Part shown: in pieces, positions 1 through 21,374 of the stretch
Layout: the number at the start of each line of letters is the position of its first letter
Position numbering within the stretch: position 1 is the first letter of the stretch
From: Macrostomum lignano
Taxonomy: Eukaryota
Reading direction: 5' to 3'
Length of the DNA stretch: 25,717 nt
Assembly: GCA_002269645.1 (NCBI GenBank)
Contig: NIVC01005117.1
Location: 1-25,717 of the forward strand
Made by a program: the position numbers and the translations under genes
The notes under the pieces: model-generated
The model's input: only the letters and a program-made list of their open reading frames with translations
Database searches by the model: none
Told to the model about the DNA's origin: nothing

Positions 1-362
1 CCGCCTCTCTCATCTCCCATCTCGCTTGCTCAGAGTCCCGCTTCACTCACTCACTCACTCACTTATGCAGTTCTACCCGCCCACATTACCCCTTATCAGG
101 GCGTACTTCATTTTCTCTCCAAGCCTCACCTGCCTGCCAGCTCTCCGGGTTTCGGCAAAGTCAGCGAAGTGTGAAATCAGCGAGTCACCCCAGATTGTAG
201 TTGACTTTACTCACAGCCTGCAAAGTGCTTGCTGCTGATTGAGATTGAGCGCGAGGCTGAGATTCACTCAGCGAGACATTGAGGATGGAGACTATATTGT
301 TTTACATAGAGAGATCGGAGATAAGACTGTGAGATTCACTCCTATACTGCTCAGACTTACAG

Positions 363-586
363 AGATGAGATCGGAGATGAGATCGGAGATGAGATCGGAG
401 ATGAGATCGGAGATGAGATCGGAGATGAGATCGGAGATGAGATCGGAGATGAGATCGGAGATGAGATCGGAGATGAGATCGAGATGAGATCGGAGATGAG
501 ATCGGAAGATGAGATCGGAGATTAGATCGGAGATGAGATCGGAGATGAGATCGGAGATGAGATCGGAGATGAGATCGGAGATGAGA
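363..586. repeat. 12-bp minisatellite (AGATGAGATCGG)n, ~18 copies
   Basis: Direct tandem periodicity with a few indels or substitutions near 480-530. It produces the spurious (SEMR)n and (SDLI)n ORFs. Confidence 0.95.
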
Positions 587-1315
587 ACTGTGAGATTCAC
601 TCTAACTACTATGCAATAATATCTATAGTACATTTACAAGCCGTAGCTTCGGACATGAGGCTCAGTGACTCGCAAAAATCCTCTGGTAAAAACGTTTCTC
701 CAGAGCATGGCTGAGCAAGTATTCTCTCACTAATCTTATTCTCTTTCTCTCACTCTCAAAATCTCATATTTTCGTATTTGATTTGCCGCCACCCCCCCCC
801 CCCCAATACCGCTGGAGCGGATTTGAACTCAAACTCTAGGGAGAGCTGAAAGAAAGCAATTTTTCTCGCGCCGACCCACGCTCGCCGGCCCCAGTAATGC
901 CAGATTTGATAGCTGAGCAATGCCCGGGCCGGCTGCACTGGGATTTCGGGAGAGTGCGAGCCAAAACTGAGGCGAGCCGGAGCTGCCCTGTTTTATTTTG
1001 AGTCCGGCCCCGAGTTAATTTTCAGCGGCCGGACTGGCTGAAAGAAATAAAAGGAAATGTGGGAAAGAGAAATAGAAGAGGAGACAGGATGGATGAGAGA
1101 GAGAAGGGGGGCAGGCGCCCGATAGGAAACCGGAGACAAGGAGCGGCAGACCGCACGCACAAGGGGGGGGGGTCCAATGGTAACTCGCCGCGAGCCTCGG
1201 CCACACGCTTGAGAAGGCTAATCAGGCACGCCGCTGCTGCTTGAATCTGTGCAGTGCAGATGTAAGCGCGAAGAGCTCAGCGCTTGCTGGTACTCTCGAG
1301 AATTCCGCACATCCT

Positions 1316-2170
1316 GTGTCTCTAGGAATCGATCATGTGTCTTTCTAGGAATCGATCATGTGTCTTTCTAGGAATCGATCATTTGTCTTTCTAGGAATCG
1401 ATCATGTGTCTTTCTAGAATCGATGCATGTATCTTTCTAGGAATCGATCATGTGTCTTTCTAGGAATCGATCATTTGTCTCTAGAATCGATCATGTGTCT
1501 TTCTAGGAATCGATCATGTGTCTTTCTAGAATCAATCATGTGTCTTTCTAGAGTCGATCATGGTGTCTTTCTAGGAGTCGATCATGTGTCGTTCTAGGAA
1601 TCGAGAATTAGTCTTTCTAGGAATCGAGAATGCGTCTTTCTAGGAATGAGAATTAGTCTTTCTAGGAATCGAGAATGCGTCTTTCTAGGAATCGATCATG
1701 TATCTTTCTAGAATCGATCATGTGTCTTTCTAGGAATCGATCATTTGTCTTTCTAGGAATCGATCATGTGTCTTTCTAGGAATCGATCATGTGTCTTTCT
1801 AGGAATCAATCATGTGTCTTTCTAGGAGTCGATCATGTGTCTTTCTAGGAGTCGATCATGTGTCGTTCTAGGAATCGAGAATTAGTCTTTCTAGGAATCG
1901 AGAATGCGTCTTTCTAGGAATCGAGAATGTGTCTTTCTAGGAATCGATCATGTGTCTTTCTAGGAATCGATGTGTCTTTCTCTGAATCGATTTATGTGTC
2001 TTTCTTGGATTCGATCATGTCTTTATAGAATCAAGAATGTGTCTTTCTGTTCAGCGAGAATGTCTTTCTAGAATCGATCATGTGTCTTTCTAGGTATCGA
2101 GAAAGTCTCCGTCTGGGAATAAAAAAGGTGTCTTTCTGGGAATCGAGAATGTGTCTTTCTGGAATTCGGT
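1316..2170. repeat. ~23-bp satellite (TCTTTCTAGGAATCGATCATGTG)n, ~35 copies, with higher-order variant blocks
   Basis: Clear tandem units. A variant series (AATCAATC, GAGTCGATC x2, GTTCTAGG..GAGAATTAG, GAGAATGCG) occurs twice, at ~1525-1680 and ~1800-1910. The array degenerates after ~1970. Confidence 0.95.
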
Positions 2171-3847
2171 TTCGAAATAAAAATAATTTAGTATATTACG
2201 GTCCTAGACTTCAGATTGCGTCGGATGGCCGGATGAGGGTCGCCGATGCCTCCTCTGCGAACCTGCCGACTATTGGCGCCGGCTGGGCGCATCCGCTAGG
2301 TTGAACCTTGTATATTTTACCTTGGGGTTGCGATAGGAACCTTGCGGCCTAATCACGGCCCCTTCAGCAGTAAGTACGTTGGCTCCCGACGCAGTTGCAG
2401 CCAGTCCATTGAAAACTGGCATCTATTGTTTTGTCCCACCACCCCCACTCCTCTTGTCAGTCAGTTTCTCCATTCGAGGGAAATACGTGTGCGACTTGAC
2501 TGTAGGAAATCCCCTACCAAGCGTGGAGAGACAGATCGAGAGGCTGGTAAAGGAAATTGAAACAAGTATTGGCTGCTGGTAGATCATTTTTTCTCTTTAT
2601 TTCAGCCGGGTAGGATGAAGCCAATGGACTCCTATTGGCCGTTATAGTTGCTGGGTGGGAGCGATGAGGATGGATTGAAGGTTGGCCCGATGGGAGCAGG
2701 TTCCCCCCCCCCCCCCCCCCCCACACAAGAAAGCACCTTTCATGCGCCGGCTTGCGAGCGAGTAAGCGGCAGCGCCGCACGCAGGAAGGAGACTGGAGGA
2801 TGGAGCAATTTCTCTGCCCTCTTTACCACCCCCACCCTCAGATCCCGCCAAATCCACCGGCCAGGCTGACGGGCCAGTCAAGGGGGTATTAGGCGAGCCA
2901 AGTCGCTCACGGAGGTCGAGAGAGAAAAAAGAAAAGGAGGGAGAGAAAGAGAGGCAGGGAGCCGCTGAGAAGCTTGAAATAGAACGAGGCAGCCGTCCGA
3001 CGACGCAGCAACTTCAACTTCTTCAACAGCGGCCATCCCGCCTGTTTTCTATCGCCACTCTTCTCTCTCTCTCTCTCTGTGTGTCTGTCTGCCTGTCCGG
3101 CCTTACCGCTTCACTGAAGGCTCCGTCCGCAAGAAGGAAAAGCAGAAAAGGAGAAAAAGGAGCTGCCTCGAGGCTCGCAGCGGGCGAAGAGACCTGGAGA
3201 AGGGATCAGTATTCAGAAAGTCTACGGATCGGACTTCCTTCCAGCCCGTGCCCAGGCTCCGTTTGCCTCCCCATCAGTCCAGACAGGGCTTCACTTTACT
3301 TCTCAGCTCTTTTACCCTTTCAAGCCTTACCTCTTCTCCCTTCTCTCTCCGTAATCCCAGGACTGAGGGTGAGGCAGCGGCAAGGGAACAGTCGGGCATC
3401 CGGTTTCCCAATCCCCGGCTGTGCGGGACAAAGAAGCGCGGCCGGCCAGCAAAAGCAAATCAGAGCAGGCCTCGTCTCGGCACCAGCATCAGAAGTTTGC
3501 ATCCTCACTGGCAGTCGGCGACAGTCCAACGCGAGAGGCGCTTCCAGAGTGCGGTAAGACTCAAAAGTGGAAAGCTGTATACCCAGGCGCGGATTACTCT
3601 GCCCCTCTGCTCAGCTGTGCTCAGCTCAACCTCTCGCAGCCCGCTTCAAATACTATCATCATCATGTTTCTTCTTTGTGTCACAAGGCTGCCACGCCCAC
3701 TGGGTAGAGAGCAGGCAGAGACACGGAGGGCAAAGAAGAGAGGGGAATGGAACGGCCGGGAAGACTCGTTGCGAAAGAAACAGACGGACAAGAAGCGTTT
3801 GTTCTTTGCAGCTCTGTGCGCCCGCCCGCTCTGTGCACTGGGCTATG

Positions 3848-4432
<585 letters not shown>

Positions 4433-5067
4433 CACTGTCCTATTTCTCCTATTTCTGCATTAGCAGACCTGCTTGACCTGCACAAAAGCGAGCTGGAATA
4501 GCAAACGGGAAGCGCAGAGTCGACCAGCTGGTTCATCCCCCTTTTTGCAGCGTTTCAAGATCAAAAAGTCCGTGTCCTATTACCTAATTTCAGCCCGCCA
4601 TGCAGTCTCCCTCTGGTCCGTGATTTTTTTCTGCTTCTTTTCCCCACCCTCCAGGTCTGCCTGCGCAGCCTGCCGCCACACAGCCGCCACAGCCGCCGCC
4701 ACCGCTGCTGCTGCCGCTGCTGTTGTTGTAGAAGAGGGACGTTGGGCCACTGATTGCCCGGACCGCTCCGGCAGCCAGGAGAGATTGTGTCCCCACTTCC
4801 CCGGGGCCAGCCCGGGATTGCCCCCTATTCCTCCCCCAGTCCCCCTCTCTCTCTCTCGCCCTGACCCGCGGAAACCACCGGGCGTCCTTTCGGTTCAGCG
4901 CCAAAAACTCTCCTGGCCTCAGATCCGCCCTCTTTCTTTGCCCTGCAGCGAATTGGCTCGGTCAAAGCTGCCCCTCCTCTTCTCTCCGCCAACGCGCTCT
5001 CTCCGCTGGCCCCGTCGCCACCCCCTCACCGCCAGGAAGAGGAGGAGGCGGCAAAGCGCGACCCGTC

Positions 5068-6408
5068 ATGAATTCTGACGAGCCGGTAGTTCGTCTGGCG
5101 AAGGCGGAGTTTCTCAGGGCGCTGGACACATCGGCGCGGAATTACACAACCGGCAGAAACTTCGGCGTCGGCGGAGGCGGCGGCGGCGTCGGTGGTGTCC
5201 CCAATCGAACGCACGCAGCATTCTCGGTGCCGCCCCCGGCAGTTGCCATGGCGACAACAATCAACTCGCTGATCCCGGCTCCGCCAACTTCGCCTAGTAG
5301 CCGGCCGCCAACCCCGGTGCTGCTCTATTCGCTCGGGTTCGGCCTGGCCGGCCTGACGCTGGTTGCTCAGCTGGCGCTCGCCCTGCTGGCCATCGCGCGG
5401 GCCTGCGGGCGCCGGCGCCGACAGCACGCCGACTGCCTCTACGGCCTGTGCGCCCACGCCGCTATCATCGGCGCTGTCCAAGGCGGCTACGTGACGGTGA
5501 CGCACACTTTGCTGCTGGCCCGCGGTCCGGAGGGCCTGGCCGACCCGCTGTGGCGCGTCAACTGCAAGGCCTACCTGTTCTGCCGCTCCCTGCTCCCAGG
5601 GCTGTTCCTGCACCTGCTCGCCAGCGTCGGCGTGGCCTTCAAGACCATCCGGTACCCCGCCAGGCGCTGCTCCAGCAGCCTCTGCGGCAGGGCGGGCGGC
5701 CTGGCCGTGCACTGCCTGCCTTGGGCGATGTGCAGCGGCGCCCTGCTTCCGGCTTTAGTGCTGCACAAAGACGTCACCGAGGCCGCGATTCGAGCGGGTC
5801 GCTGCACCGTCCCGGAGCTCTGGCCTTGGCTGGCGCCACTGCTGGTGCTGTTCGGCCTACCGCAGGTGGCGCTGCTGCTGCTCACCTGTCTTCTCTGCGC
5901 TTTCCGGCCCTACGCCACCGGCGATGAAGACGAAGATGCCGACGACTCGCTGGAGGATGCGGCCAACAACGGCGAGGGCGAGCTACGGCCGCCGGGCTAC
6001 CTGCCGGCTGCCAACCACCTGAACCAGGGGCAGCCGCAGTCGCCGCAGTCGCGCACTCTGCTCCGCGGCCGCCCGATGCGCATCGCCCGCCTGCTGCTGA
6101 TTGTGCTCAACTGTCTTGAGGCGGCCACCCAGCTGCCTTACTCCATCATCAGTCTGCTGCAGACTGTGCTGCGAAACCGGCAGGCCAGGCATCTCATACC
6201 GGATGACACAGTTGACATTGCATTCTGGCTGCACATGGCCTTCTTCCCCGTGGCCAGCGTGTTCCTGGCGGCCCTGGTGGTCCAGCTGGACAAGGCCTAC
6301 CAGCTCACCGAGCGGGATCTGCACCAGAGAGGCGGTGCGAAACCGTCCAGAGGCGGAGGCGGGCCAGACGAAGTTCTGTACACGGCCAGCATGCTGTCTT
6401 CGGTGTGA
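5068..6408 (+). CDS. Orphan class A-like (rhodopsin-type) 7TM receptor, 446 aa, single exon, atypical motifs
   Basis: GC-rich 446-codon ORF with seven hydrophobic segments at GPCR spacing. It has an N-terminal sequon (N25-Y-T), a Cys at the start of TM3 (WRVNCKAY) plus an ECL2 Cys (GRCT), TM4 W...P (LPW..LLP), TM5 FGLP, TM6 QLPY and TM7 FP. The DRY and NPxxY motifs are not conserved. Confidence 0.8.
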   Translation: MNSDEPVVRLAKAEFLRALDTSARNYTTGRNFGVGGGGGGVGGVPNRTHAAFSVPPPAVAMATTINSLIPAPPTSPSSRPPTPVLLYSLGFGLAGLTLVAQLALALLAIARACGRRRRQHADCLYGLCAHAAIIGAVQGGYVTVTHTLLLARGPEGLADPLWRVNCKAYLFCRSLLPGLFLHLLASVGVAFKTIRYPARRCSSSLCGRAGGLAVHCLPWAMCSGALLPALVLHKDVTEAAIRAGRCTVPELWPWLAPLLVLFGLPQVALLLLTCLLCAFRPYATGDEDEDADDSLEDAANNGEGELRPPGYLPAANHLNQGQPQSPQSRTLLRGRPMRIARLLLIVLNCLEAATQLPYSIISLLQTVLRNRQARHLIPDDTVDIAFWLHMAFFPVASVFLAALVVQLDKAYQLTERDLHQRGGAKPSRGGGGPDEVLYTASMLSSV

Positions 6409-6441
6409 CCTCACTTTGAGATCCGCAAAACTGTTTCACGG

Positions 6442-6667
6442 CAGCCTGAGTGCTCAGTCGGTGTGACACACAGCAGCCTGAGTGCTCAGTCGGTGTGACA
6501 CACAGCAGCCTGAGTGCTCAGTCGGTGTGACACACAGCAGCCTGAGTGCTCAGTCGGTGTGACACACAGCAGCCTGAGTGCTCAGTCGGTGTGACACACA
6601 GCAGCCTGAGTGCTCAGTCGGTGTGACACACAGCAGCCTGAGTGCTCAGTCGGTGTGACACGCAGCA
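6442..6667. repeat. 32-bp minisatellite (CAGCCTGAGTGCTCAGTCGGTGTGACACACAG) x7 in the presumed GPCR 3' UTR
   Basis: Near-perfect units start at 6442, 6474, 6506, 6538, 6570, 6602 and 6634. Confidence 0.97.
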
Positions 6668-7475
6668 TTAGTAAAAATCCCCTATACAATTTATCCGATT
6701 TCGTCCTGCTAGTCAATTTCGCGAATTGTCTATTGAGTATTTCATATTCTGATCAACAAATTCGTGACCTCTCTCTCTCTCTCTCAATGTTAATGAGTTT
6801 CTCAAAAAAAAATTAGACACTGCTTTTTTACGATGAGGCACGAGAATGCACAAATACAGTTGTGTAGCATATTTGGCATCGCGCTTCAATGCTTGCGTCA
6901 AATTAATTATTTATAGCATAATTCATTGTATAATCCTGAATACGACACGTTCATGAAGAAATTTAGAAAGCAGAAATGTGTTTGTTTCCGAGAAATTTCT
7001 GCGCGAGTCTTTTTTTGCCAAGCATTCAAGAGATCCAGTGAGGGAGTTTCTTGTGAACAAAAATCGCTTTGAGATCTCCCTTTCATTCCCAGAACGCCTC
7101 GGTGAGGCGCCGGCCACTCGGCCGGCATGAGGGCTCCGCCAGATTGCGAAGCAGTCTCTCTCTTTACACGTTTCCTTTAGTCCTGCCAAACCCGTCTCAG
7201 GTTCCCTTGAGAAATTGATGGAATGGGACGGAGAGGGAGAGGCGCCCGGCCTGTTCCACGGCAGAGGGGGCCGAGAGTCGCGGGACTTCAGCCCTCGAAT
7301 TTCCAGCATCCTCCCTCAGCGCCCACGCCTCATCTGTCCGAGGGCACACGATGGGAGCGAAGCGAAAGCCCAACATACGGACGGGATACAAACTGGGTGG
7401 GATTAGTGGTTTCGCTTTTCCTGTGTGCTTGAGGTTGCCACGGGCACAAAGACAAAAGTTCCGCAGCAGCCCTGA

Positions 7476-9450
<1,975 letters not shown>

Positions 9451-10320
9451 ATCCATGATATCGCTTTATCCGCATTTTACTGTGATCTATCATTTATCAG
9501 AAATTTCAGAAACATCAGAAAAGGCTATGCTTTGCAATCTGTCAAAAAAGATGCCAGCTATAAATCATCCGCAATGCCTCTCAGGTCTCCGGCCCCATCA
9601 AAACCAGAGGGGCGGAGCACTAAGGGGTCGCAGCGAGGCTGAGGCCCGGGCACAAAAATCGAGTTAGCAATGCAAAGCGCAACGCCTTCTAGCTCACGAG
9701 GCTCGGCCTAAATACGAGTAAGAAGCTGCGAGCGCCTTCGCCTTCATCATCTACTTTGCCCCCCCCTCTCCCCTGTTCTCAGCATCCCTTCAGTGCCCAT
9801 TATTTCTCTAATTATACTATAGGCCGCTCCCCACGTGGCCCCTCTGTTGCTAAGGCAGATGAAGCAAAGCAGATTTTCTCCCGAGTTAGAAAAAAATAAA
9901 GTTGCGGAAGCAAGCGCTGAAGGCTCCTCCAAGGTGGAGGGCCTGGCGGGGAGCGGCACCCGATCCTAAGCCGATTAGCCAAGAATTCTTTGCGAAAAGA
10001 CTGCTTAAATTCTTCCTCACAAATTGGAACTCTTTGAAACTGATTTGCTAAATTTAAATGGTTCGAGACTGTACACCCTGTGTGAGCGTCTGCGTGCCTG
10101 CCTACAGTATTGGCGCTTGTACGCTTTTATGTGATCAGAAGTCAGCGTAAAGGGCTGTGGGACGATGTCATCGCAGTCGTTGCGCCAGGGTGCCCCCACA
10201 GCCGTCTTGCAATTATTATTTTATTATTAAACATCTTTCAGCCTACTTCCAGTAGGAAGCAAGGAATATACTTTAAAGGAAGGAGCCTGACCTCAATTTT
10301 CAAGGAATGCATGTAGAACA

Positions 10321-10621
10321 GGGGTTGCAGCCTAGTGGTTAGAGCGTCGGACTAGCGATTTGAAGGTCGGGGGTTCGATTCCCGATCCCACTGGAAAAAA
10401 TAGTGTCCTTGAGCAAGACACTTAACTCTGCATTGCTTCAGTTCACCCAGATGTAAAATGGGTGCCAGCATTAGCTGGGGTAATTGAGGGTGTGTGGCGA
10501 CCCCCCAGTCCTTGGACTGAACAGCCGTACGCAGCCTTCAGATGCGCCGCGCAATAGCTGCGGCTGAGCTGTCGGTTGCACAGCTGGCCCAAATAGGGCA
10601 GGTGTAATCAATTATTATCAA
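10321..10621 (+). mobile_element. tRNA-derived CORE-type SINE, apparently full length (~300 bp)
   Basis: tRNA-like head with box A (AGCCTAGTGG) and box B (GGTTCGATTCC). At 10402-10462, AGTGTCCTTGAGCAAGACACTTAACTCTGCATTGCTTCAGTTCACCCAGATGTAAAATGGG aligns without gaps at about 70% to the recalled MIR CORE consensus. It ends in a short ATTATTAT tail and has a candidate TSD ATGTAGAA at 10311-10318 and 10622-10629. Confidence 0.85.
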
Positions 10622-11199
10622 ATGTAGAAAGCTAATTTTTTTCGCAATTTAATCGTTAAACGTGCGAAGCTTGGTGCAAAATAAAAATATTAGGTATATA
10701 TTCCAGTTTTAAAGTTACTGCTGTCCTCTTATTGACCACAAATATGAATATACACATTAACTTCAGAGCATTACGCCTACAAAAAACAAACAGGCCTTGA
10801 CAACGGGCTTGCCAGTCCTCATAAACCATTGAGTTGCTCTGTCAATGCTGCCTTAAATAGGAGCAATTATTGCACAACTGTTTCAGTTGTCAACAAGATA
10901 ATTAGCTAATTAGCTAGTTAGAACACTTTGTTATGCAGAATTTTCCTGTCTCCAAAAGCTTCTAGCTAGCTTTAATTTTGATTAATATTACACAGGAAAA
11001 CAGCGTACCATTGCCATAATTACAGTCTGCAGATTTGCTCCGTAGAAAAGGTTGGAAATCAGATGGAAGGCGAGGGCTGCCGACAGTCGGGACTTTAGCC
11101 CAACTAAATTCTTTCTGCTTTCTTTATTTCTTACTTTCCTTTCTAACTTTCTCCATGTTAATCCGAGTGGCGACAACGGTGGTGGTGGGTGTCATGGGG

Positions 11200-11532
11200 T
11201 GTAGCTGGCGCCCCTTCTGTAACTGGCGCCACCTCTGTAGCTGGCGTCCCTCTGTAGCTGGCGCCCCCTCTGTAGCTGGCGCCCCTTCTGTAGCTGGCGC
11301 CCCTTCTGTAGCTGGCGCCACCTCTGTAGCTGGCGTCCCTATTTACCTCGCGACCTTTCTGTAGCTGGCGCCCCTCTGTAGCTGGCGCCCCTTCTGTAGC
11401 TGGCGCCACCTCTGTAGCTGGCGTCCCTCTGTAGCTGGCGCCCCTTCTGTAGCTGGCGCCCCTTCTGTAGCTGGCGCCCCCTCTGTAGCTGGTGTCCCTC
11501 TTTACCTGGCGACCTTTCTGTAGCTGGCGCCC
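11200..11532. repeat. 18-bp minisatellite (CTGTAGCTGGCGCCCCCT)n with a twice-repeated TTTACCT.GCGACCTTT interruption
   Basis: Tandem units that translate as (APATEG)n on the minus strand. The same interruption at ~11340 and ~11500 indicates a block duplication. Confidence 0.95.
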
Positions 11533-12033
11533 CGCCTGAAGGTAGGCGGGTAAAAGGCGTAGCGTATTGTAGACCAGAACACAAAGGAAAATTACTCGAT
11601 CTGTCTATTGACTTGATTGCGCATAACTCAATTAGATGTATTTGCACAGAGTTTCTGTCACAAATTGCCTCTAGATGGTTGCTAGGTTACAAGGCATAAC
11701 AATAGGGCTCATGACTGCCTCTGTTGTACTACGTACACTGTGAGGCCTGCACAGCCCAACTGGTCGACTGTTTGACAGCCAATAACCCCAGAATCCAATT
11801 AGTCGGTGCCCAGTTATTGACTTATCCGCAGCTGCCATGCATGGCCCAAACATGGCCTAATTGGCTGAGCATCGCGGTGGATAGGGGGAGAGAAATGGGA
11901 GCAGAATGTAACGATACAGACTGCGATCCAGTATTTCAGTCACGAAAAAGACTGCGCATACTCCAAGATTGAATTCGAGAAAACTGATACCCAATACATA
12001 GGAAATTGAAAGTTATCGAAGCAGCGACAGGCA

Positions 12034-14158
12034 ATGAAACCACAGACACCACCAAATAGCGAAAATGAAGGAGACAATTTCTTTGGTTTTGAGCTGTCCA
12101 GCCGCCTGACTGAGTGCGTGCGGTGCGATGACGTGCAGCGGATGCTGGCGGTGCTGTCTGCAGCTGGCCTCGGACCCGAACACCTCAGCGGCCATCTAAG
12201 CACCGACGCTGAGATGCAGCGATCGACTGGCTGCTGGACGAGATCCTCATCGGGCCGCACTTCATCTGCTCAGCGCTGCAGCGTCAGCTTCAGCACAATC
12301 GTTCACCTCAGCGTGTTCAGGCAGAGCTCACGGGTGCTGAGCTTCATCTCTGCTGAACAGCCTCACCTGCTCATGATGCGAGACGATTCTGGCTCAGGTG
12401 TGCTGCACTGTCTGGCGGAGGCGAGCGTGCTGCTCCGGCGGAAGAGTGCTACCGGCGGAAACACTCGCCTCTCGAGCAGTTCGACGCGTTCCAGACTCGA
12501 CTGCTCTCCATGCTGAGCGACGTCGAGAGTCCGTACTCGGAGCAGCAGTGAGTCCGATATTGTGACTCATGTGTGAGTGAGCTCGAGCACTGTCTCGCAG
12601 CTAGTCATGCAGTCTCGCTCCGTTTCAGATCTGCATCGAGTCTGCTGCACTCGCTGTGTCTCATGGAGAACTCGGACGGACTGAGACCGCTGGAGTTATC
12701 TGTTCTCATCGGAGCATACTCCACATTTCAGTGCATCCTGCACGTAAAAGGCTACATTCTGAGTAAGCAGGTGAGTCACGGCATTCGAGTTCGCAACACG
12801 TTCGACCTGCGGGAGTACGATCTGATGAAGGGTGAGCGGAGGGACAAGAATCCCATGCTCATGCTCACTCTGATCTCGGCGTCGGAGGCGGATCCACTGT
12901 CGGAGTCGGGACTGCTCGAGTGTCCCGTCATCAAGAAGTGGATGAAAGCAATTTTCTTGACATGCGCGGCACTGTGATGCTGAAAAGCATGTTTCTACCA
13001 ACAATAGTGACCTATATGAGTCCTCTGACTCCGTTCATAGTTGCGGTGGCCAGCTTTGTCCAATTCGGTCACTACCTGCAGGTTGGATATCGGGAACACA
13101 TTGGCTACTTGAGGTCGCAACTGCCCAGAGGTGTCTTTGGTGCCTCGAATACCAGCGCTCAAGAGCTCGCGGTGGATTTTGTGCGGTCCAGTTGCTCCTC
13201 CCTGCAAATTCTGGCTTTCCTCTCCAACAGGTCCAATCCAGACAACAACGCCGTGATCTGTGTTTCCCCCGTTTTTTTCAACGATGTGAAGCGCTACGAG
13301 GTGTTTCGGCTACCTCTCCTGATTCCGTTGATAGTTTTGGGGTATCTGCTAGTTCAGGCTGTCATCATTGTGCACCGGACAAGGATAGTCCTCCGCAGTC
13401 CCCGATGGATGCCTCGCAGATCGAATTATCTCGTGCAGAGTCGTTTCTATGACAACGTGTTCATAATGAGCTTCATCAGTGGCCTGGTGTATGTCAGTAG
13501 CACTTTGGTTATGCTCTGGATGCTGGACTGTTCAGACTATGTGCTGGACCCTGCTACTGAAAACTACCGACTGCAAGTATTGTCAAGTGTCTCAGAGTGC
13601 TCCGCTGTTCTATTCATTTTCTTCAATCTGTTCAGCATCATTGAAGTGTACGAGATGATACTTAAACACGTGGCCTTCTTAGCCATCTGCTTTCGCTGGA
13701 TGTTGGCCAAGTTTTTAAACTCCATTCCACTGCTGTTTATCTGGGCCTACCTGGTGTTTGGCACCCTTCTGTACCTTGCCGACGTTAATGGTACCGATTT
13801 TCAATCGCATTTCGCAGTATTCTACTCACCGATGCTGTTGATTGTCAACCTGCTCCAGCTGTCGCCAAGGCTGTCTGTAATGATTTTGCACACTCTGTTC
13901 GCTCTCATCGTGACCATTAACATCCAGAACCTACTCATTGCCTACATTTTGCATGCGTTCAGTCACGTGGCAGTCAATTTCGAATTGATCTACCAGCTAT
14001 CCAGCCTTAACTGCTCCTTCAAGGCGTGGAAGTTCTATTGGTTTCTGACTCGAATGCTCCGCTACTGGGCAAAGGAGGAGCAGGAGCCAAGGTACGTCCT
14101 GACCGTTTGCAGCTTGCGGCCACCTCGCAGCCGATTTTTTGACACGAACCGAAGCTGA
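12034..14158 (+). pseudogene. TRPV-like channel copy 1 (ankyrin repeats + 6TM), disrupted by two 1-bp deletions; pseudogene or assembly error; 681 aa if repaired
   Basis: Exon 1 is 12034-12547, the intron is 12548-12628 (GTGAGT...TTTCAG) and exon 2 is 12629-14158. It lacks one G at ~12474 relative to copy 2 (CTCTCGAG vs CTCTCGGAG) and one T at ~12952-12955. Restoring both gives 2046 nt = 681 aa + stop, largely colinear with copy 2. S6 has QNLLIA, matching the TRP NLLIA motif. Confidence 0.7.
12548..12628 (+). other. 81-nt GT-AG intron of TRPV-like copy 1
   Basis: CA|GTGAGT donor and CTCGCTCCGTTTCAG| acceptor. It matches the copy 2 intron at 79 of 81 positions. Confidence 0.8.
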
Positions 14159-14362
14159 AGCGGAATAATTTTGGAAATCAGCCCAGTCTTAAACTGCATG
14201 CATCGGTCATTTTTACAGCTAACAGATGAAAATGCGATGAAAAACATATGCGGCATCTTCAGTCTTTAACCTTTTATTCTGAATTATAGTATGAATACTT
14301 ACACTAAAGTCAGTTAGCCGATGAAGAGGACTCCAACTACTATAGCTATGTAAGTGGTATAA

Positions 14363-14368
14363 AATAAA
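14363..14368 (+). promoter_or_regulatory. Candidate polyadenylation signal (AATAAA) for TRPV-like copy 1
   Basis: AATAAA about 200 nt after the stop codon, but in AT-rich sequence where it could occur by chance. Confidence 0.3.
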
Positions 14369-15283
14369 AAAAATAAGGGCGTAATGTTTGCTAAGAGTAA
14401 TAACTTGGAAAATACACAAATATTTCTGGCAACTTGGCCCGATTGGTTTTGGATAACACGCGACTAACGAGAGAGACAAAAAACTCATAACGTTTCCGCT
14501 TCGAGTATAAAACGATTAAATCTACATGTATATTTATTTAAATCACTAGTAAATTTCTTCTCTTCCGTGAATCTTAAAACCTTAGAACCTTAGAAAATTT
14601 ATGGCTTATTTTCATCTCCATGCACGCTACCTTATGTTACTTAGAGTTTTTTGCACTTATTAGTATTATTATTAATATAATATTTTTGATATATTTTTCA
14701 TAGGCACAGTGAAGTGTACATGCCTAACGATAAATAAATTAGCGCCGCTGTGCACTCCTGTGTGAGTGTGTGCCTGTGCGTATGACTGCGTACGTATCCG
14801 CGCGCTTGTATGCCTGCTCAGGGGAGTCGGCGGAATGGGCAGCAATGCCTCTCGCCGGTTGTGTGACAATGTCGCTTACTGCCTCTAATAAAAACGGTAA
14901 ATGCCCGTTCGATGCAATGTATCCTACAAAAATAGAAAAATTTGTTTAAAGAACACTAAGACTTACTTATGCTGCTTCTGCTTTGTAATAAGCAAAATGA
15001 GGCCTTCAAACGATTTTCAATAATCTGGCATCCCCTGCTACAACCAATGGTCCATAGAACCAGCCAAAAAGTCGATAAGACTAGTTAAGGTTGTAAAAAG
15101 AATGCTTAAATTTACTACTCAAATTATTGATAACACACTGAGCAAGCAGTGTGTTATCAATAATTCTCAGAAATGTAATTAAGTCGATAACGCTTCCTGG
15201 ATGGCTGTGCCAACTCTGTGTGAATCGACGAGTAGAGAGCGACTCAACAAACATTTGCACTTCGGAAGCAAGAGGCAATCATT

Positions 15284-15289
15284 TATAAA
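15284..15289 (+). promoter_or_regulatory. Candidate TATA box for TRPV-like copy 2
   Basis: TATAAA about 65 nt upstream of the ATG at 15353 (GACCATG context). Position-based only. Confidence 0.3.
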
Positions 15290-15352
15290 GAGAGGTGGGC
15301 GGTAGCTGAAATGTAGTCAAGGGATACTCTTGAGTGCTCAGTATCCAAGACC

Positions 15353-15846
15353 ATGCCTCAAGAAGATTCAGGATTTGTCTTCGACCCTGAGCTGTCTAAT
15401 CGCCTGACGGAGTGCCTGCGGTGCGATGACGTGCAGCGGATGCTGGCGGTGCTGTCTGCAGCTGGCCTCGGACCCGAACACCTCAGCGGCCATCTAAGCA
15501 CCGACGCTGAGATGCAGCGATCGACTGGCTGCTGGACGAGATCCTCATCGGGCCGCACTTCATCTGCTCAGCGCTGCAGCGTCAGCTTCAGCACAATCGT
15601 TCACCTCAGCGTGCTCAGGCAGAGCTCACGGGTGCTGAGCTTCATCTCTGCTGAACAGCCTCACCTGCTCATGATGCGAGACGATTCTGGCTCAGGTGTT
15701 CTGCACTGTCTGGCGGAGGCGAGCGTGCTGCTCCGGCGGAAGAGTGCTACCGGCGGAAACACTCGCCTCTCGGAGCAGTTCGACGCGTTCCAGACTCGAC
15801 TGCTCTCCATGCTAAGCGACGTCGAGAGTCCGTACTCGGAGCAGCA
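15353..15846 (+). CDS. TRPV-like channel copy 2, exon 1 (N-terminus with ankyrin-like repeats)
   Basis: STIVHLSVLRQSSRVLSFISAEQPHLLMMRDDSGSGVLHCLAE fits the ankyrin pattern and resembles TRPV5/6 QDSLGNTVLHIL. The exon ends at a CA|GTGAGT donor (phase 2). Confidence 0.75.
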
Positions 15847-15927
15847 GTGAGTCCGATATTGTGTCTCATGTGTGAGTGAGCTCGAGCACTGTCTCGCAGC
15901 TGGTCATGCAGTCTCGCTCCGTTTCAG
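15847..15927 (+). other. 81-nt GT-AG intron of TRPV-like copy 2, containing the in-frame TGA that splits the two ORFs
   Basis: Consensus donor GTGAGT and a pyrimidine-rich TTTCAG acceptor. The length is a multiple of 3, and splicing yields ...PYSEQQ|SASSLLHSLCLMENSDGLRPL... in frame. Confidence 0.8.
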
Positions 15928-17440
15928 ATCTGCATCGAGTCTGCTGCACTCGCTGTGTCTCATGGAGAACTCGGACGGACTGAGACCGCTGGAGTTATCT
16001 GTTCTCATCGGAGCATACTCCACATTTCAGTGCATCCTGCACGTAAAAGGCTACATTCTGAGTAAGCAGGTGAGTCACGGCATTCGAGTTCGCAACACGT
16101 TTGACCTGCGGGAGTACGATCTGATGAAGGGTGAGCGGAGGGACAAGAATCCCATGCTCATGCTCACTCTGATCTCGGCGTCGGAGGCGGATCCACTGTC
16201 GGAGTCGGGACTGCTCGAGTGTCCTGTTATCAAGAAGTGGATGAAAGCAGTTGTTAGCGAGATGTCCTGCGCCATGTACATGCACAGAGCAGCCATTGTC
16301 ATATTCACTTTGATCTTCTCTCCCATTACATTTTCGTTCGGGACCATATCCGCGATGCTGTGCGGCGGCTACCAGCTTCAGTTGGGGTTCTCCGAGTTCA
16401 CCCAATATATGCGGTCGCTGATTAATGGCTCGCTGTCCAACGGGTCCTCAACCGAGGAATTCATTCGGCATGGCTGCCAGCCAGAAAACCTATTCCGCTT
16501 CCTGATCACGGATCTAAATCCCGCGAACAGCCGTGTGCTGCTCCGGTCTCCAGTTTTCTTTACGCGGGTCACCCGGTCCAACATCATTGCAAATCTCATC
16601 AGCGTCCTGATCCTCTTAGCAATATTTCAGGCCTTTAGACTGGTCACCATTGTTTACAACGTTGTCAAAGATCGACAGTTCTATTCATCCCGATGGATGC
16701 CTGCCTCCAAGTCCGATTTTGTAGTTCAGTCGCACTTCTATGACGCAGTGTACGCGCTGTGCTTTGCAACGGGTCTGATCTATATAGTCTTGGCCAGCTT
16801 GTTGAGCAGATTCCTAGACTGCTCAGCTCTTGTCCTGGGCATTTCCAGCGGCACTTTCTGGCTGTCGGTGCTAACGCAATCCGCTGAGTGCTCGGCTGTT
16901 TTGTACTTCTTCTTCAACATGTTCGGCCTATTTGAGGCCTACGAAATGGCAGTGAAGCAGGCGGCTTTTCTCAGCATCTGCTTCCGGAAGATGTTGGTGA
17001 ACTTCCTGCTGGTACTGCCGCTGCTGCTAGTCTGGGCCTACCTGGTGTTCGGCACCCTGCTCTACATGACAGACTTTCGAGGCCAGGAGTTTAGCTCGCA
17101 TCGTCACGTGCTGTACTCCCCGCTGCGGCTGATTATTAACACGGCCAACCTGCCGCACCGGCTGTCTACCAGCCTTCTGCACACGCTGTTCGTTATCAGC
17201 GTGAGCATCAGCGTGCAGAACTTCATCATTGGCTATATTGTGAGCGCGTTCAAAGAGGTTTCGTCAAAATTTGACATTGTATACCATTTGAGCGGCTTGG
17301 ATGCTGCCTTGCGCACCTGGCGTCTCTACCCGGGTCTGCTCAGGGTGGTGCATCTGTGCAGGAGTAGCCGGAGTCCATTCTGTAAGAGACCGAGCAGCAC
17401 TGCAATCCGGGTGTGGAGTCTTCGACCAACGGCCGGATAA
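15928..17440 (+). CDS. TRPV-like channel copy 2, exon 2 (last ankyrin repeat, linker, S1-S6); spliced protein 668 aa
   Basis: NSDGLRPLELSVLIGAYSTFQCIL...HGIRVRNTFDLREYD...LLECPVIKKW parallels recalled TRPV6 [23 protein letters not shown]...YGPLTSTLYDLTEID...ILDQTPVKELVSLKW. Six hydrophobic segments plus a re-entrant pore segment follow, with S4-S5 linker ICFRKML and S6 QNFIIG. Confidence 0.8.
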
Positions 17441-17706: not shown

Positions 17707-18465
17707 TATTTGAGATGAATCGATTGTATCGTGACGATAACTTTGCTTTAATAAAATGAAAAAACTATATTATCCAAGAGTACTTATCGGTAGACATTAC
17801 GGCACTACTTTCAATAGAGTGTGCAGTGTATTTACAGAAATCTATAAACGCAAAGCATATAGCAGCAGGGTTAGATAAGTCCCGGATTTTGCCACCAAAT
17901 GTAGGCGTAACCGAGAAAACGAGTCGCAAGCGCATGCCCTTTAAAATAATTGCTTTTTCATAGCGGATAGAGGGATCGCGGCGTAATTATAAGTAATAAT
18001 TGATAGATAAGTATTTATGCGTATAGCATTACAGAAGTTTGCACGCAAGAGATATATAAACACTTATTAGCATCGATTTAGTGGTGGTTTCGCTACCTCT
18101 GTCGCAACTTTGCGACCAACCAGAGACAGAGACGCGAGCAGAAGTACATGATAAGGTCATTGTCTGCGTTGCTATGGAGTGACTGCAGCGAAACAAGCGC
18201 TGAGACACTGCCCGGGAGGGGAAATAGAATCTGAGTTGCTAGACAAACGTATAACAAGTGTCGAATGAGAAAGGATATTACACAGGCGGGAACTGGTTTT
18301 GCATTGACAGACAAATTCATTGCTTTTCGCGGTAGCTCGGTTTGCTGCTTAATGTTTAACGGTCGATTTTTGAAACGCGCTGGCTTGCTTTTCTGACGAA
18401 TCCTTTTCTAGAACTTGCTTTAGAGTGTTTTAAGAGGAGTAACACGGCCCTTTAGAGTGAGTTCT

Positions 18466-18752
18466 ACCGGGGTGCCAGTGTCGAACAGTGTCAGTGTGTC
18501 TACCAGGGTGCCAGTGTCGAACAGTGTCAGTGTGTCCACCGGGGTGCCAGTGTCGAACAGTGTCAGTGTGTCCACCGGGGTGTCGGTGTGTCTAACGGAG
18601 TGTCAGTGTCTCTACCAGGGTGTCAGTGTGTCTACCAGGGTGTTTGTGTCTATCAGAGTGTCAGTGCCTCTACCGGGGCATGTCAGAATCTCTTCTGGAG
18701 TGTCAGCGCATCCACAGGAGTGTCAGTGCATCGGAAGGAGTGTCAGCGTCTC
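18466..18752. repeat. 36-bp repeat (ACCGGGGTGCCAGTGTCGAACAGTGTCAGTGTGTC[C/T]) x3 decaying into ~18-20-bp GTGTCAGTGT..CTACC units
   Basis: Three near-identical 36-mers followed by degenerate subunits. It lies downstream of the Post2 stop, possibly in the 3' UTR. Confidence 0.85.
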
Positions 18753-19789: not shown

Positions 19790-19926
19790 CTGACGCTCAG
19801 TCAGATGCAGTTGGCAAGAAATTTCCCATCGTTTTTGCCGGGTGATGTAGGCGTTCATGAGGAACTCGCGCTCTAGCATGGCCGTCTGGTAGCGAGTGTA
19901 CGGCTTGCGCTTCTTGCGGCTGCGCA
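19790..19926 (-). CDS. Post2: Posterior Hox gene Post2, middle coding exon (homeodomain residues 1-44)
   Basis: [45 protein letters not shown] matches the spiralian Post2 signature ([20 protein letters not shown]). The acceptor is CCCCCGCAG| and the donor is CAG|GTAAGC. Phases are compatible with both flanking exons. Confidence 0.95.
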
Positions 19927-19944
19927 CTGCGGGGGCGGCGGGTG

Positions 19945-20810
19945 GGGGAGAATCAGGTGAGGGCGGGTGGGGAATCACGTGAGAAGGGGTGGGGAATCAG
20001 GCGAGAGCGGGTGGGGAATCACGTGAGAAGGGGTGGGAATTGTAGATTTGTTTTAGGGGTAAGAAAAGGCTTGGCCACTGCGCGGCCTTGAGCGCCAATA
20101 TATATATTTAGAAATCGATATTTGCGTGGGGTGGAGTTGCGCCTGATAAACAAGAAGCGTGCAAGCTAATTGGCTGCAGAGCGACCGGGGCAGGCATTGT
20201 ACACTTGAGGGTCAGAGAGTTAAACGGTGTACGGCCAACAGGAATCAGGTGAGGGCGGGTGGGGAATCACGTGAGAAGGGGTGGGGAATCACGTGAGAAG
20301 GGGTGGGGAATCAGGTGAGGGGGGGTGGGGAATTGTGTGAATTGCAGGAGGATAATCAGGGGGAATTGCGGGAGGGGAATCAGGGATATTTGCTGGAGAG
20401 GAATCAGGGTATTGCTGGAGAGGAATTAGGGGTATTGCTGGAGGGGAATCAGGGTATAGCTGGAGGGGAATCAGGGGTATTGCTGGAGGGGGATCTGGTG
20501 AATTGCGAGAGGGGGATCTGGTGAATTGCGAGAGGGAAAGCGGGTGAATTGCGGAAGGGGAATCAGGGGAATTGCGGGAGGATAATTAGGGGTATTGCGG
20601 GAAGATAATCAGCAGGGGAAGTGCGGGAGGTGAATCAGGGGAATTGCGGGACGTAAATCAGGTGAATTGCAGGAGGGGAATCAGGGGAATTGCGGGAGGT
20701 GAATCAAGCTAATTGCGGGAGGTGAATCAGGTGAATTGCGGGCGGTGAATCAGGGGAATTGCGAGGGGGGATCACGTGAATTGCGGGAGAGGAATTGGGT
20801 GAATTCTTCT
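19945..20810. repeat. Purine/G-rich degenerate repeats in Post2 intron 1 (GGGGAATC.. and GGGAATTGCGGGA.. units)
   Basis: Repeated GGGTGGGGAATCA and GAATTGCG units. A 48-bp block at 19951-19998 is copied exactly at 20243-20290, with unique sequence between ~20040 and 20240. Confidence 0.85.
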
Positions 20811-21211
20811 TAATAAAAAACAGACGGACGAGTTGGCCTCTTTCCTCTAGGATAGGGTCTACAAACAGAAATTTTTGCAAAAAAGATTGCGCTAAAAGCC
20901 ACACTTCCCCTTAGACAGTTTAGGATCAATTAGTAAAATGCGCAGATTAACCATAAATTTTCTTTGATAATCATCAGACTCCGCGCAAACGCCAGTAGCA
21001 ACTGTCAACAGGCCAGCAGGCTATTTTTTGTCTCTTGGCTTTTAAAAGGTGAGGCGCTCTCAGCAACAGGGCAGATGATCGGTCAAATTTGGGTGGCTGC
21101 CTGGAAGCTGCTAATGGATTTTTCGGTTTTTAAGTGCCGCAAAGAGAGCATGCATGGGTGACCCCATTGACCCCCCTCCGTGGACCCCGAAGCCCCGTGG
21201 GATGCACGTAC

Positions 21212-21340
21212 CGCCGGCTGCGGAGTCTGGATCAGCGAACTCGTCCAGCCGGGGCAGCATCATCTCGTGCGGAGCAAACAGGTACGAGCCACCGCCGACG
21301 CCACCGCCAGCGCCGCCGACTCCGACGACACCTCCGCGAA

Positions 21341-21374
<34 letters not shown>

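What the first reader, a model, noticed from the sequence alone, without database searches (positions are those of the whole stretch)
12091..16249. Sharp-edged ~830-bp homogenised tract: identical ankyrin domain on divergent pores
12120-12950 and 15418-16249 differ at only about 9 positions (~99%), including the intron (79/81) and silent sites. On both sides the genes are old paralogues: the N-termini are unrelated (MKPQTPPNSENEGDNFFGF vs MPQEDSGFVFDP) and S3-S6 is only ~50% identical (96/192 by hand), with S1-S2 lower still. The tract ends exactly at KKWMKA, the ankyrin-linker/pre-S1 boundary. This is the signature of recent interlocus gene conversion, or of domain-restricted concerted evolution, that keeps the ligand/assembly module the same while the pore modules diverge.
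Basis: partly seen in the sequence, partly recalled or inferred. Interest (0 to 1): 0.72.

Follow-up and report, generated by a model that had tools for sequence, protein, structure and literature searches.

The report
Gene-conversion patch between tandem TRPV-like channels
Two old neighbouring TRPV-like ion-channel genes share an almost identical 830-bp stretch encoding their whole cytosolic ankyrin/linker domain, the ordinary signature of recent copy-and-paste (gene conversion) between paralogues, but the upstream copy is frame-broken as assembled, which weakens the idea that the sharing is kept for function.

Summary
12120-12950 and 15418-16249 differ by 8 substitutions and one 1-bp indel (about 99% identity). 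This includes an 81-nt intron (79/81) and silent sites (pS 0.027). The rest of the two genes is 39% identical in protein and 51% in DNA, with silent sites near saturation, and the flanks are not homologous. Both genes belong to a lophotrochozoan TRPV-like channel family. That link is remote and goes only through a family profile and a predicted fold. The tract covers residues 23-272, the ankyrin and linker module, and ends eight residues into the pre-S1 helix. Non-allelic gene conversion between old tandem paralogues is the best explanation.

A has a 1-bp deletion at 12473/12474 inside the tract, and a second -1 frame change exactly at the tract's 3' junction (about 12951-12956). A therefore reads in three frames. 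Its membrane module is still intact and matches the family profile as well as B's does, so A is either very recently disabled or mis-polished. There is no GC3 excess in the tract and no positive evidence that identity is selected. This is a well-known kind of event in a new gene family. Interest is modest.

The parts
12120..12950 (+). Tract copy in gene A (upstream paralogue): near-identical core
   Evidence: 8 substitutions and 1 indel against 15418-16249
15418..16249 (+). Tract copy in gene B (downstream paralogue). It encodes residues 23-272: ankyrin repeats, linker beta-hairpin and helices, and the start of the pre-S1 helix
12090..12119 (+). 5' transition zone, 25/30 identical to 15388-15417. 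It is either an older conversion edge or a conserved motif
   Evidence: The best 30-nt window in the TM region reaches 28/30, so this is ambiguous
12034..12473 (+). Gene A start codon and first part of exon 1, read in frame 1. Without the missing base this frame stops at 12514-12516 (160 aa)
12473..12474 (+). Site of the 1-bp deletion in A relative to B 15772 (G against GG). It shifts A from frame 1 to frame 0. B's frame is the conserved one, since the Macrostomum homologue aligns across the site
12548..12628 (+). Intron of gene A (81 nt, GT..AG), 79/81 identical to B's intron
12951..12956 (+). 3' junction of the tract in A. A reads ATT-TT where B reads GTTGTT, a second -1 frame change (frame 0 to frame 2). 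Frame 0 stops at 12975-12977
12947..14158 (+). Gene A membrane module (S1-S6, TRP-helix region, C-tail). It is an intact open frame in frame 2 and keeps the family S6 motif N-L-L-I-A
15353..15846 (+). Gene B exon 1
15847..15927 (+). Gene B intron (81 nt, GT..AG)
15928..17440 (+). Gene B exon 2 up to the stop codon. Together with exon 1 it gives an uninterrupted 668-aa TRPV-like protein

Best explanation
Genes A (12034-14158) and B (15353-17440) are ancient tandem duplicates of a TRPV-like cation channel, in the same orientation about 3.3 kb apart. A recent non-allelic (interlocus) gene-conversion event copied about 830 bp from one into the other, most likely B into A. The copied stretch covers most of exon 1, the intron, and the start of exon 2, which is the whole cytosolic ankyrin-plus-linker module up to the pre-S1 helix.

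Shown: the near-identity at silent and intron sites, the saturated divergence and non-homologous flanks outside the tract, the collinearity of the two genes, and the domain assignment.

Inferred: homology-dependent conversion needs roughly 80% identity or more, and about 200 bp of good match. The event therefore probably took place inside a pre-existing island of similarity that earlier conversions had kept alive, and the sharp edges are simply where usable homology ends. The thin zones of intermediate divergence at both edges fit this. No selection for sameness is needed.

Gene A is currently out of frame at two places, one inside the tract and one at its 3' junction. I put this at roughly even odds between a real, very recent disablement of A (possibly caused by an imprecise junction) and consensus or polishing errors at a paralogous repeat.

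The confidence given here (0.62) is for this specific version: homology-dependent, neutral, and within a maintained island. Gene conversion of some kind I put at about 0.9.
For: Tract at about 99% identity, including intron 79/81 and pS 0.027 against pN 0.0018. Outside the tract: 51% nt, 39% aa, four-fold sites 33/68 identical, best 100-nt window 71%. Flanks are not homologous. The A-B offset changes only from 3298 to 3299 to 3300 along the genes, so the patch sits at the homologous position. There is no third copy and no mobile-element signal in the window. Edge zones are significantly more diverged than the core: 5 differences in 30 nt at the 5' edge and 3 in 28 nt at the 3' edge, against 7 in 806 nt in the core (Poisson P 8e-6 and 2e-3). 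The homology requirement for conversion is taken from PMC3924818. B is intact and A is broken at the junction, which points to A as the acceptor. The window holds a roughly 2-kb near-perfect microsatellite, which implies a long-read assembly whose reads would span an 830-bp repeat.
Against: GC3 in the tract (0.70) equals that in B's membrane part (0.69), so there is no biased-conversion footprint of long-term exchange. The 25/30 zone at the 5' edge could be plain motif conservation, since 28/30 occurs in the TM region. A frameshift exactly at the 3' junction is not expected from clean homologous resolution. No reads, transcripts or orthologous loci could be examined: three word-seeded protein searches returned nothing, and the closest relatives are only about 20-34% identical.
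Confidence: 0.62

Rival explanations
1. Selection-maintained, domain-restricted concerted evolution ('paired channels'). Repeated conversion is favoured because both subunits must carry the same cytosolic ankyrin/linker module, for co-assembly or for a shared regulator, while their pores diverge.
For: The tract coincides with a complete structural module and ends in the pre-S1 helix. Five of the six coding differences are synonymous (P = 0.004 under neutrality). A's membrane module is as well conserved as B's, at 47.3 bits each against the homologue-only profile. The post-intron part of the tract is the most conserved region of the family. Precedent exists in paired immune receptors, Siglec-11/16 and CEACAMs (PMC5701461, PMC2832619).
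Against: As assembled, A cannot translate the module in frame with its pore. There are two frameshifts, and rescue would need two extra 26-53-nt introns without splice signals in sequence that B reads as exon. There is no GC3 excess. The synonymous bias is equally explained if the differences are standing silent polymorphism of the donor gene. A domain-shaped tract is expected anyway if homology ends there.
Confidence: 0.15
2. A one-off, homology-independent patch replacement, such as microhomology-mediated template switching or break-induced copying. It pasted B's N-terminal module over A's diverged one, made an imprecise 3' junction, and so killed A.
For: There is a -1 frame error within about 5 nt of the last identical base. 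There is no usable homology beyond the 3' edge: the next 120 nt are 33% identical. There is no GC3 signal of long-term conversion. A's membrane ORF is still intact, which fits a very recent death.
Against: The patch is perfectly collinear with the homologous position at both ends, which is unlikely for an illegitimate event. Both edges show intermediate-divergence zones rather than a uniform tract. The second frameshift (12473/4) needs a separate event.
Confidence: 0.15
3. Assembly or polishing artefact: the tract in one gene was written over by reads from the other, or the contig is chimeric.
For: Both frame errors in A lie in or at the edge of the repeated tract, where mis-mapped paralogous reads can corrupt a consensus. 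The indels sit in short runs: G against GG, and a T run.
Against: Polishing cannot create 830 bp of identity from sequence that is about 50% identical. The two copies keep 8 private substitutions. The window spans about 2 kb of perfect microsatellite, so the reads were much longer than the tract. About 1,800 other codons in the window are free of frameshifts.
Confidence: 0.05
4. No conversion at all: extreme purifying selection on the N-terminal domain, or a recent whole-gene duplication with accelerated pore divergence.
For: The N-terminal linker region is the most conserved part of the family.
Against: The intron (79/81) and synonymous sites (pS 0.027) are as identical as replacement sites. 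Synonymous sites in the membrane part are near saturation, and the flanks are unalignable.
Confidence: 0.01

Closest known systems
Interlocus (non-allelic) gene conversion between tandem paralogues, as reviewed in PMC3924818 and PMC3966223
   Same: A short tract of a few hundred bp to about 1 kb is near-identical, including silent and intron sites, and sits inside otherwise diverged, closely linked, same-orientation duplicates.
   Different: The flanking divergence is extreme (about 50% nt). The tract must therefore lie in a long-maintained homology island or result from an atypical event. One junction carries a frame error.
Paired-receptor concerted evolution: Siglec-11/Siglec-16 (PMC5701461), Siglec-5/-14 (PMC4042635), CEACAM families (PMC2832619)
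   Same: Conversion is confined to the N-terminal module while the transmembrane and signalling parts stay different. A pseudogene can take part as a partner (SIGLEC16P).
   Different: Those are single-pass immune receptors with shared extracellular ligand-binding domains. Here the shared module is the cytosolic ankyrin/linker domain of a six-TM channel. No evidence of repeated events across lineages could be obtained, and one partner is frame-broken as assembled.
TRPV channels (TRPV1-6; invertebrate TRPV-like clades, PMC9664204)
   Same: An N-terminal ankyrin repeat domain, a linker beta-hairpin, a pre-S1 helix, six TM helices, the S6 'N-x-L-I-A' motif and a C-terminal beta-strand. The profile E-value is about 4e-31, and all top 50 fold hits are TRPV1-6.
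   Different: These genes are very divergent. Neither A nor B alone hits Pfam Ank or Ion_trans, or any PDB TRP chain. The ankyrin domain is short, with a Ser/Arg-rich disordered loop. The TRP-box tryptophan is not evident. B's S6 reads N-F-I-I-G. The nearest named relatives are uncharacterised proteins of Macrostomum lignano and Lineus longissimus.

Membership tests
Interlocus gene conversion tract | A segment of near-identity, at synonymous and intron sites as well, bounded by much more diverged paralogous sequence | tested here: met
   About 99% against 51% nt. Intron 79/81; pS 0.027 against near-saturated four-fold sites
Interlocus gene conversion tract | The tract lies at the homologous (collinear) position in both copies and is not an inserted repeat or mobile element | tested here: met
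   The offset runs 3298, 3299, 3300 along the genes. There is no third copy and no TE signal
Interlocus gene conversion tract | Both copies really exist as assembled, confirmed by spanning reads | not testable with these tools
   No reads are available. There is only the indirect argument that the assembly spans about 2-kb microsatellites
Interlocus gene conversion tract | Trees across species or strains disagree between the tract and the flanks | not testable with these tools
   No orthologues were found. Word-seeded searches were empty, and the best exhaustive hit was E 2.7e-15
Interlocus gene conversion tract | Enough donor-acceptor homology for recombination (about 80% identity or more, about 200 bp) | tested here: inconclusive
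   The present flanks are far below this. The state before the event is unknown. The edge zones of 83-89% identity hint at an older island. The requirement is cited from PMC3924818
Selection-maintained domain-restricted concerted evolution (paired-receptor type) | Both partners are intact genes that use the shared module | tested here: not met
   As assembled, A reads in three frames, with stops at 12514-6 and 12975-7. No credible intron rescue exists. This could be overturned if the two indels are assembly errors
Selection-maintained domain-restricted concerted evolution (paired-receptor type) | Repeated, independent homogenisation in several lineages | not testable with these tools
   No related loci could be retrieved
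Selection-maintained domain-restricted concerted evolution (paired-receptor type) | Compositional footprint of long-term conversion (raised GC3) | tested here: not met
   GC3 is 0.70 in the tract, 0.69 in B's TM part and 0.64 in A's TM part
TRPV-type TRP channel | Six-TM Ion_trans core with a pore loop and the S6 N-x-L-I-A motif | tested here: met
   hhalign of A+B against the homologue profile gives 99.8%, E 4e-30. The homologues carry PF00520. The family profile hits TRPV5/6/3 at about 4e-31. A keeps NLLIA while B has NFIIG. Neither gene gives a direct Pfam hit
TRPV-type TRP channel | N-terminal ankyrin repeat domain followed by a linker beta-hairpin and a pre-S1 helix | tested here: met
   The AF2 model shows helix pairs, strands E209-215 and E218-224, and helix H264 onward, with pLDDT 80-92. 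All top 50 fold hits are TRPV1-6. The relatives carry Ank Pfam domains. B alone has no significant Ank hit
TRPV-type TRP channel | TRP helix or TRP box after S6 | tested here: inconclusive
   A helix follows S6 and aligns to the TRPV5 TRP-helix region through the profile, but the box tryptophan is not evident in A or B
TRPV-type TRP channel | Forms a cation-conducting tetramer | not testable with these tools
   This needs electrophysiology

The most novel reading that the evidence does not exclude
The two frame errors in A are assembly artefacts, and the tract is kept identical by recurrent, selectively favoured conversion. This animal, probably a flatworm, would then have a 'paired channel' system: two TRPV-like subunits with interchangeable cytosolic ankyrin/linker modules (same assembly interface or regulator binding) but pores about 50% diverged. 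That would be an ion-channel counterpart of immune paired receptors.
Probability: 0.12. Interest if true: 0.6.

Novelty: new member of a known kind. Interest (0 to 1): 0.33.

Why it matters
Partial gene conversion between tandem paralogues is textbook biology, so the event itself is not new. It matters here in three practical ways.

1. It will mislead any phylogeny or dating of this TRPV-like family if the N-terminal half is included.

2. It flags gene A as either a freshly disabled channel gene or a locus with consensus errors. Annotators need to know which.

3. If A turns out to be intact, this would be a rare documented case of module-restricted homogenisation in an ion channel, and it could be tested by co-assembly experiments.

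The family itself is poorly characterised. It is a very divergent lophotrochozoan TRPV-like clade that only profile and fold methods detect.

Tried and rejected
- Pfam on A and B directly gave no hits, even at E of 1 or less.
- phmmer of A or B alone against PDB gave no TRP hits. The family link needed a profile and a fold search.
- Three word-seeded searches of the 5.8-billion-protein set returned nothing, not even a self-hit: B's C-terminal 503 aa, B's N-terminal 296 aa, and the neighbouring 446-aa ORF. The source genome is therefore not in that collection, and orthologous loci, strain comparisons and the look-up of encoding contigs were not usable.
- My first join of the intron seemed to break B's frame. 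That was my own off-by-one error: the intron is 81 nt.
- I enumerated GT..AG introns to rescue A. Single-intron solutions remove 350-500 nt of conserved coding sequence. Three-intron solutions need 26-53-nt introns without polypyrimidine tracts, in sequence that B uses as exon. I rejected both.
- I looked for a GC3 signature of biased gene conversion and found none.
- I tested whether the 25/30 zone at 12090-12119 proves an older conversion. It does not, because a conserved TM motif reaches 28/30.
- I searched for flank homology, a third copy, a mobile element, and RNA genes that might explain the tract. I found only a marginal tRNA-like hit at 10321-10390.
- A literature search found no report of gene conversion in TRPV-like channels.
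Full report
**Observation.** A repeat scan and a local alignment confirm that 12090-12953 pairs with 15388-16252 on the same strand. The core, 12120-12950 against 15418-16249, differs at 8 substitutions and one 1-bp indel: A lacks a G between 12473 and 12474 that B has at 15772. The 30 nt before the core (12090-12119) are 25/30 identical. Upstream of that, and downstream of 12953, the alignment collapses.

**Gene models.** Gene B is clean. It has exon 1 at 15353-15846, an 81-nt GT..AG intron at 15847-15927, and exon 2 at 15928-17440, giving 668 aa. My first join was off by one base, and one search corrected it. Homologues support the exon 1 reading frame. They conserve the 'DD' helix motif and the 'D..G.N..H.L' ankyrin motif, and the Macrostomum fragment P0001 aligns straight across the indel site.

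Gene A is not clean. From ATG 12034 it reads in frame 1 to 12473. The missing base moves the homologous reading to frame 0, and frame 1 stops at 12514-6. The intron (12548-12628) is conserved. The tract ends at KKWMKA(I) in frame 0, which stops at 12975-7. The membrane module is an intact open frame in frame 2 (12947-14158). tblastn of B against the window independently returns A as three pieces in frames 1, 3 and 2. At the 3' junction A reads ATT-TT where B reads GTTGTT, so there is a second -1 shift within about 5 nt of the last identical base. Rescue by splicing would need either a 350-500-nt 'intron' that removes conserved sequence or two extra 26-53-nt introns with no polypyrimidine tract. 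Those would lie in sequence that the 99%-identical B copy uses as exon. I do not consider either credible.

**How old the paralogues are.** Outside the tract the proteins are 150/382 (39%) identical. That breaks down to 30% in the S1-S2 region, 96/198 in S3-S6, and 28% in the tail. Nucleotide identity is 51%, third positions are 39% identical, and four-fold sites at shared codons are 33/68 identical. The best 100-nt window reaches 71%. The 2.4 kb upstream and 1-2 kb downstream show no similarity beyond shuffled controls. Inside the tract, pS is 0.027, intron divergence is 0.025 and pN is 0.0018. Identity at silent and intron sites rules out purifying selection as the cause. Saturated silent sites in the membrane part rule out a recent whole-gene duplication. 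The A-to-B offset changes only from 3298 to 3299 to 3300 along the genes, so the patch sits at the homologous position. There is no third copy in the window, and nothing resembling a mobile element.

**What the genes are.** Neither protein hits Pfam or any PDB chain on its own. Three word-seeded searches found nothing. An exhaustive HMMER search with the A+B profile found 99 relatives, the best at E 2.7e-15, several aligned end to end. Those relatives carry Ank and Ion_trans domains and the S6 motif 'L(I/V)NFLIALMS'. hhalign of A+B against a homologue-only alignment gives 99.8% probability, E 4e-30, over 446 columns. The family profile hits TRPV5, TRPV6 and TRPV3 structures at about 4e-31, from the ankyrin repeats through the post-S6 helix. 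An AlphaFold2 model of B (pTM 0.69) retrieves only TRPV1-6 among its top 50 fold matches. In that model the tract-encoded part has pLDDT 80-92, except for a Ser/Arg-rich loop at residues 52-76. The nearest named relatives are uncharacterised proteins of the flatworm Macrostomum lignano and the nemertean Lineus longissimus. The window probably comes from a lophotrochozoan, plausibly a flatworm, whose proteome is not in the databases.

**Where the tract ends structurally.** The tract spans residues 23-272 of B. In the model this covers the ankyrin helix pairs, the linker beta-hairpin (E209-215, E218-224), the linker helices, and the first eight residues of the long helix H264-316. 'KKW' aligns to the TRPV5 pre-S1 helix, about 15 residues before S1.

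**Mechanism.** A patch with two internal breakpoints, between linked same-orientation paralogues, is gene conversion and not a single unequal crossover. Conversion depends on homology: it occurs mainly above about 80% identity, with a minimal efficient segment of about 200 bp (PMC3924818). The present flanks are far below that. The most economical reading is that the N-terminal half has been a homology island kept alive by earlier conversions, that the latest event happened inside it, and that its edges are where usable homology stops.

Both edges are significantly more diverged than the core, which fits this reading. The 5' edge has 5 differences in 30 nt and the 3' edge has 3 in 28 nt, against 7 in 806 nt in the core (P 8e-6 and 2e-3). 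The 5' zone could instead be a conserved motif, since 28/30 occurs in the TM region. Against long-term conversion, GC3 is the same inside and outside the tract (0.70 against 0.69). The frame error at the 3' junction is more typical of an imprecise, microhomology-type join, so I keep a one-off patch replacement as a rival. The direction is probably B into A, because B is intact and the junction defect is in A. GC3 of the tract is also nearer to B's than to A's, though only weakly.

**Status of gene A.** A's membrane module scores 47.3 bits against the homologue-only profile, exactly the same as B's. It also keeps the consensus S6 'NLLIA', where B has 'NFIIG'. A was therefore under constraint for essentially all of its history. 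Five of the six coding differences in the tract are synonymous (P = 0.004 under neutrality). That could mean both copies were translated after the event, or that the differences are silent polymorphisms of the donor gene.

The two indels may therefore be a very recent disablement or consensus and polishing errors. Both lie in or at the edge of a paralogous repeat, and both sit in short runs. The roughly 2-kb perfect microsatellites in the window show that this is a long-read assembly. That makes a chimeric tract very unlikely, but it leaves small indel errors possible. I cannot decide between these without reads.

**Comparison with known systems and verdict.** The event is a new example of a well-known process, interlocus gene conversion in tandem duplicates (PMC3924818, PMC3966223). 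The module-restricted pattern resembles paired immune receptors, where conversion homogenises the N-terminal domain while the membrane and signalling parts differ and where a pseudogene can be a partner (Siglec-11/16, PMC5701461; CEACAMs, PMC2832619). I found no report of this in TRP channels. The functional inference is not supported by the sequence as assembled. Novelty: new member of a known kind. Interest: about 0.33.

Noticed in passing
window 7324-9450 and 25060-25506: About 2.1 kb of near-perfect (TCTA)n, with GC 0.25 and GC skew -1. An inverted (TAGA)n block of about 0.45 kb lies 16 kb downstream. The two tetranucleotide arrays bracket the channel gene pair in inverted orientation.
   Followed up: no
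window 3696-4400: About 0.7 kb of (CAGA)n microsatellite. It creates long spurious ORFs in several frames.
   Followed up: no
window 327-605, 1246-2166, 6405-6699, 11182-11563, 18463-18685, 19906-20822, 21992-22881, 23318-24500: The window is unusually dense in minisatellites, with units of 12, 23, 32, 18, 18, 22-23, 19/30 and 16 nt. Roughly a quarter of the window is tandem repeat.
   Followed up: no
window 5068-6408 (+): An intact single-exon 446-aa ORF with very high GC3 (0.81). It has multiple hydrophobic segments and only a weak rhodopsin-type 7TM match (E 0.039). The word-seeded search found no homologues. It may be a lineage-specific GPCR-like gene.
   Followed up: partly
window 21111-22073 (-): A GC-rich 320-aa ORF with long Gly, Gln and His runs and no real domain hit. 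It is probably an exon of a low-complexity nuclear protein.
   Followed up: partly
window 10321-10390 (+): A marginal tRNA-like match: Rfam RF00005 at 31.6 bits against a gathering score of 29. ARAGORN does not call it. It may be a degenerate tRNA or a tRNA-derived repeat, 1.6 kb upstream of gene A.
   Followed up: partly
window 15506-15580 (B residues 52-76; same in A at 12208-12282): A Ser/Arg-rich low-complexity loop inside the ankyrin domain, predicted disordered (pLDDT below 50). An alternative frame over the same DNA gives a more globular-looking 47-aa open stretch (AIDWLLDEILIGPHF...), but homologue alignment supports the annotated frame.
   Followed up: partly
window 17126-17150 (B S6) against 13826-13850 (A S6), approximate: The intact gene B departs from the family's nearly invariant S6 motif (N-F-I-I-G instead of N-F/L-L-I-A), while the frame-broken gene A keeps it. 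B's pore gate may be functionally unusual.
   Followed up: no
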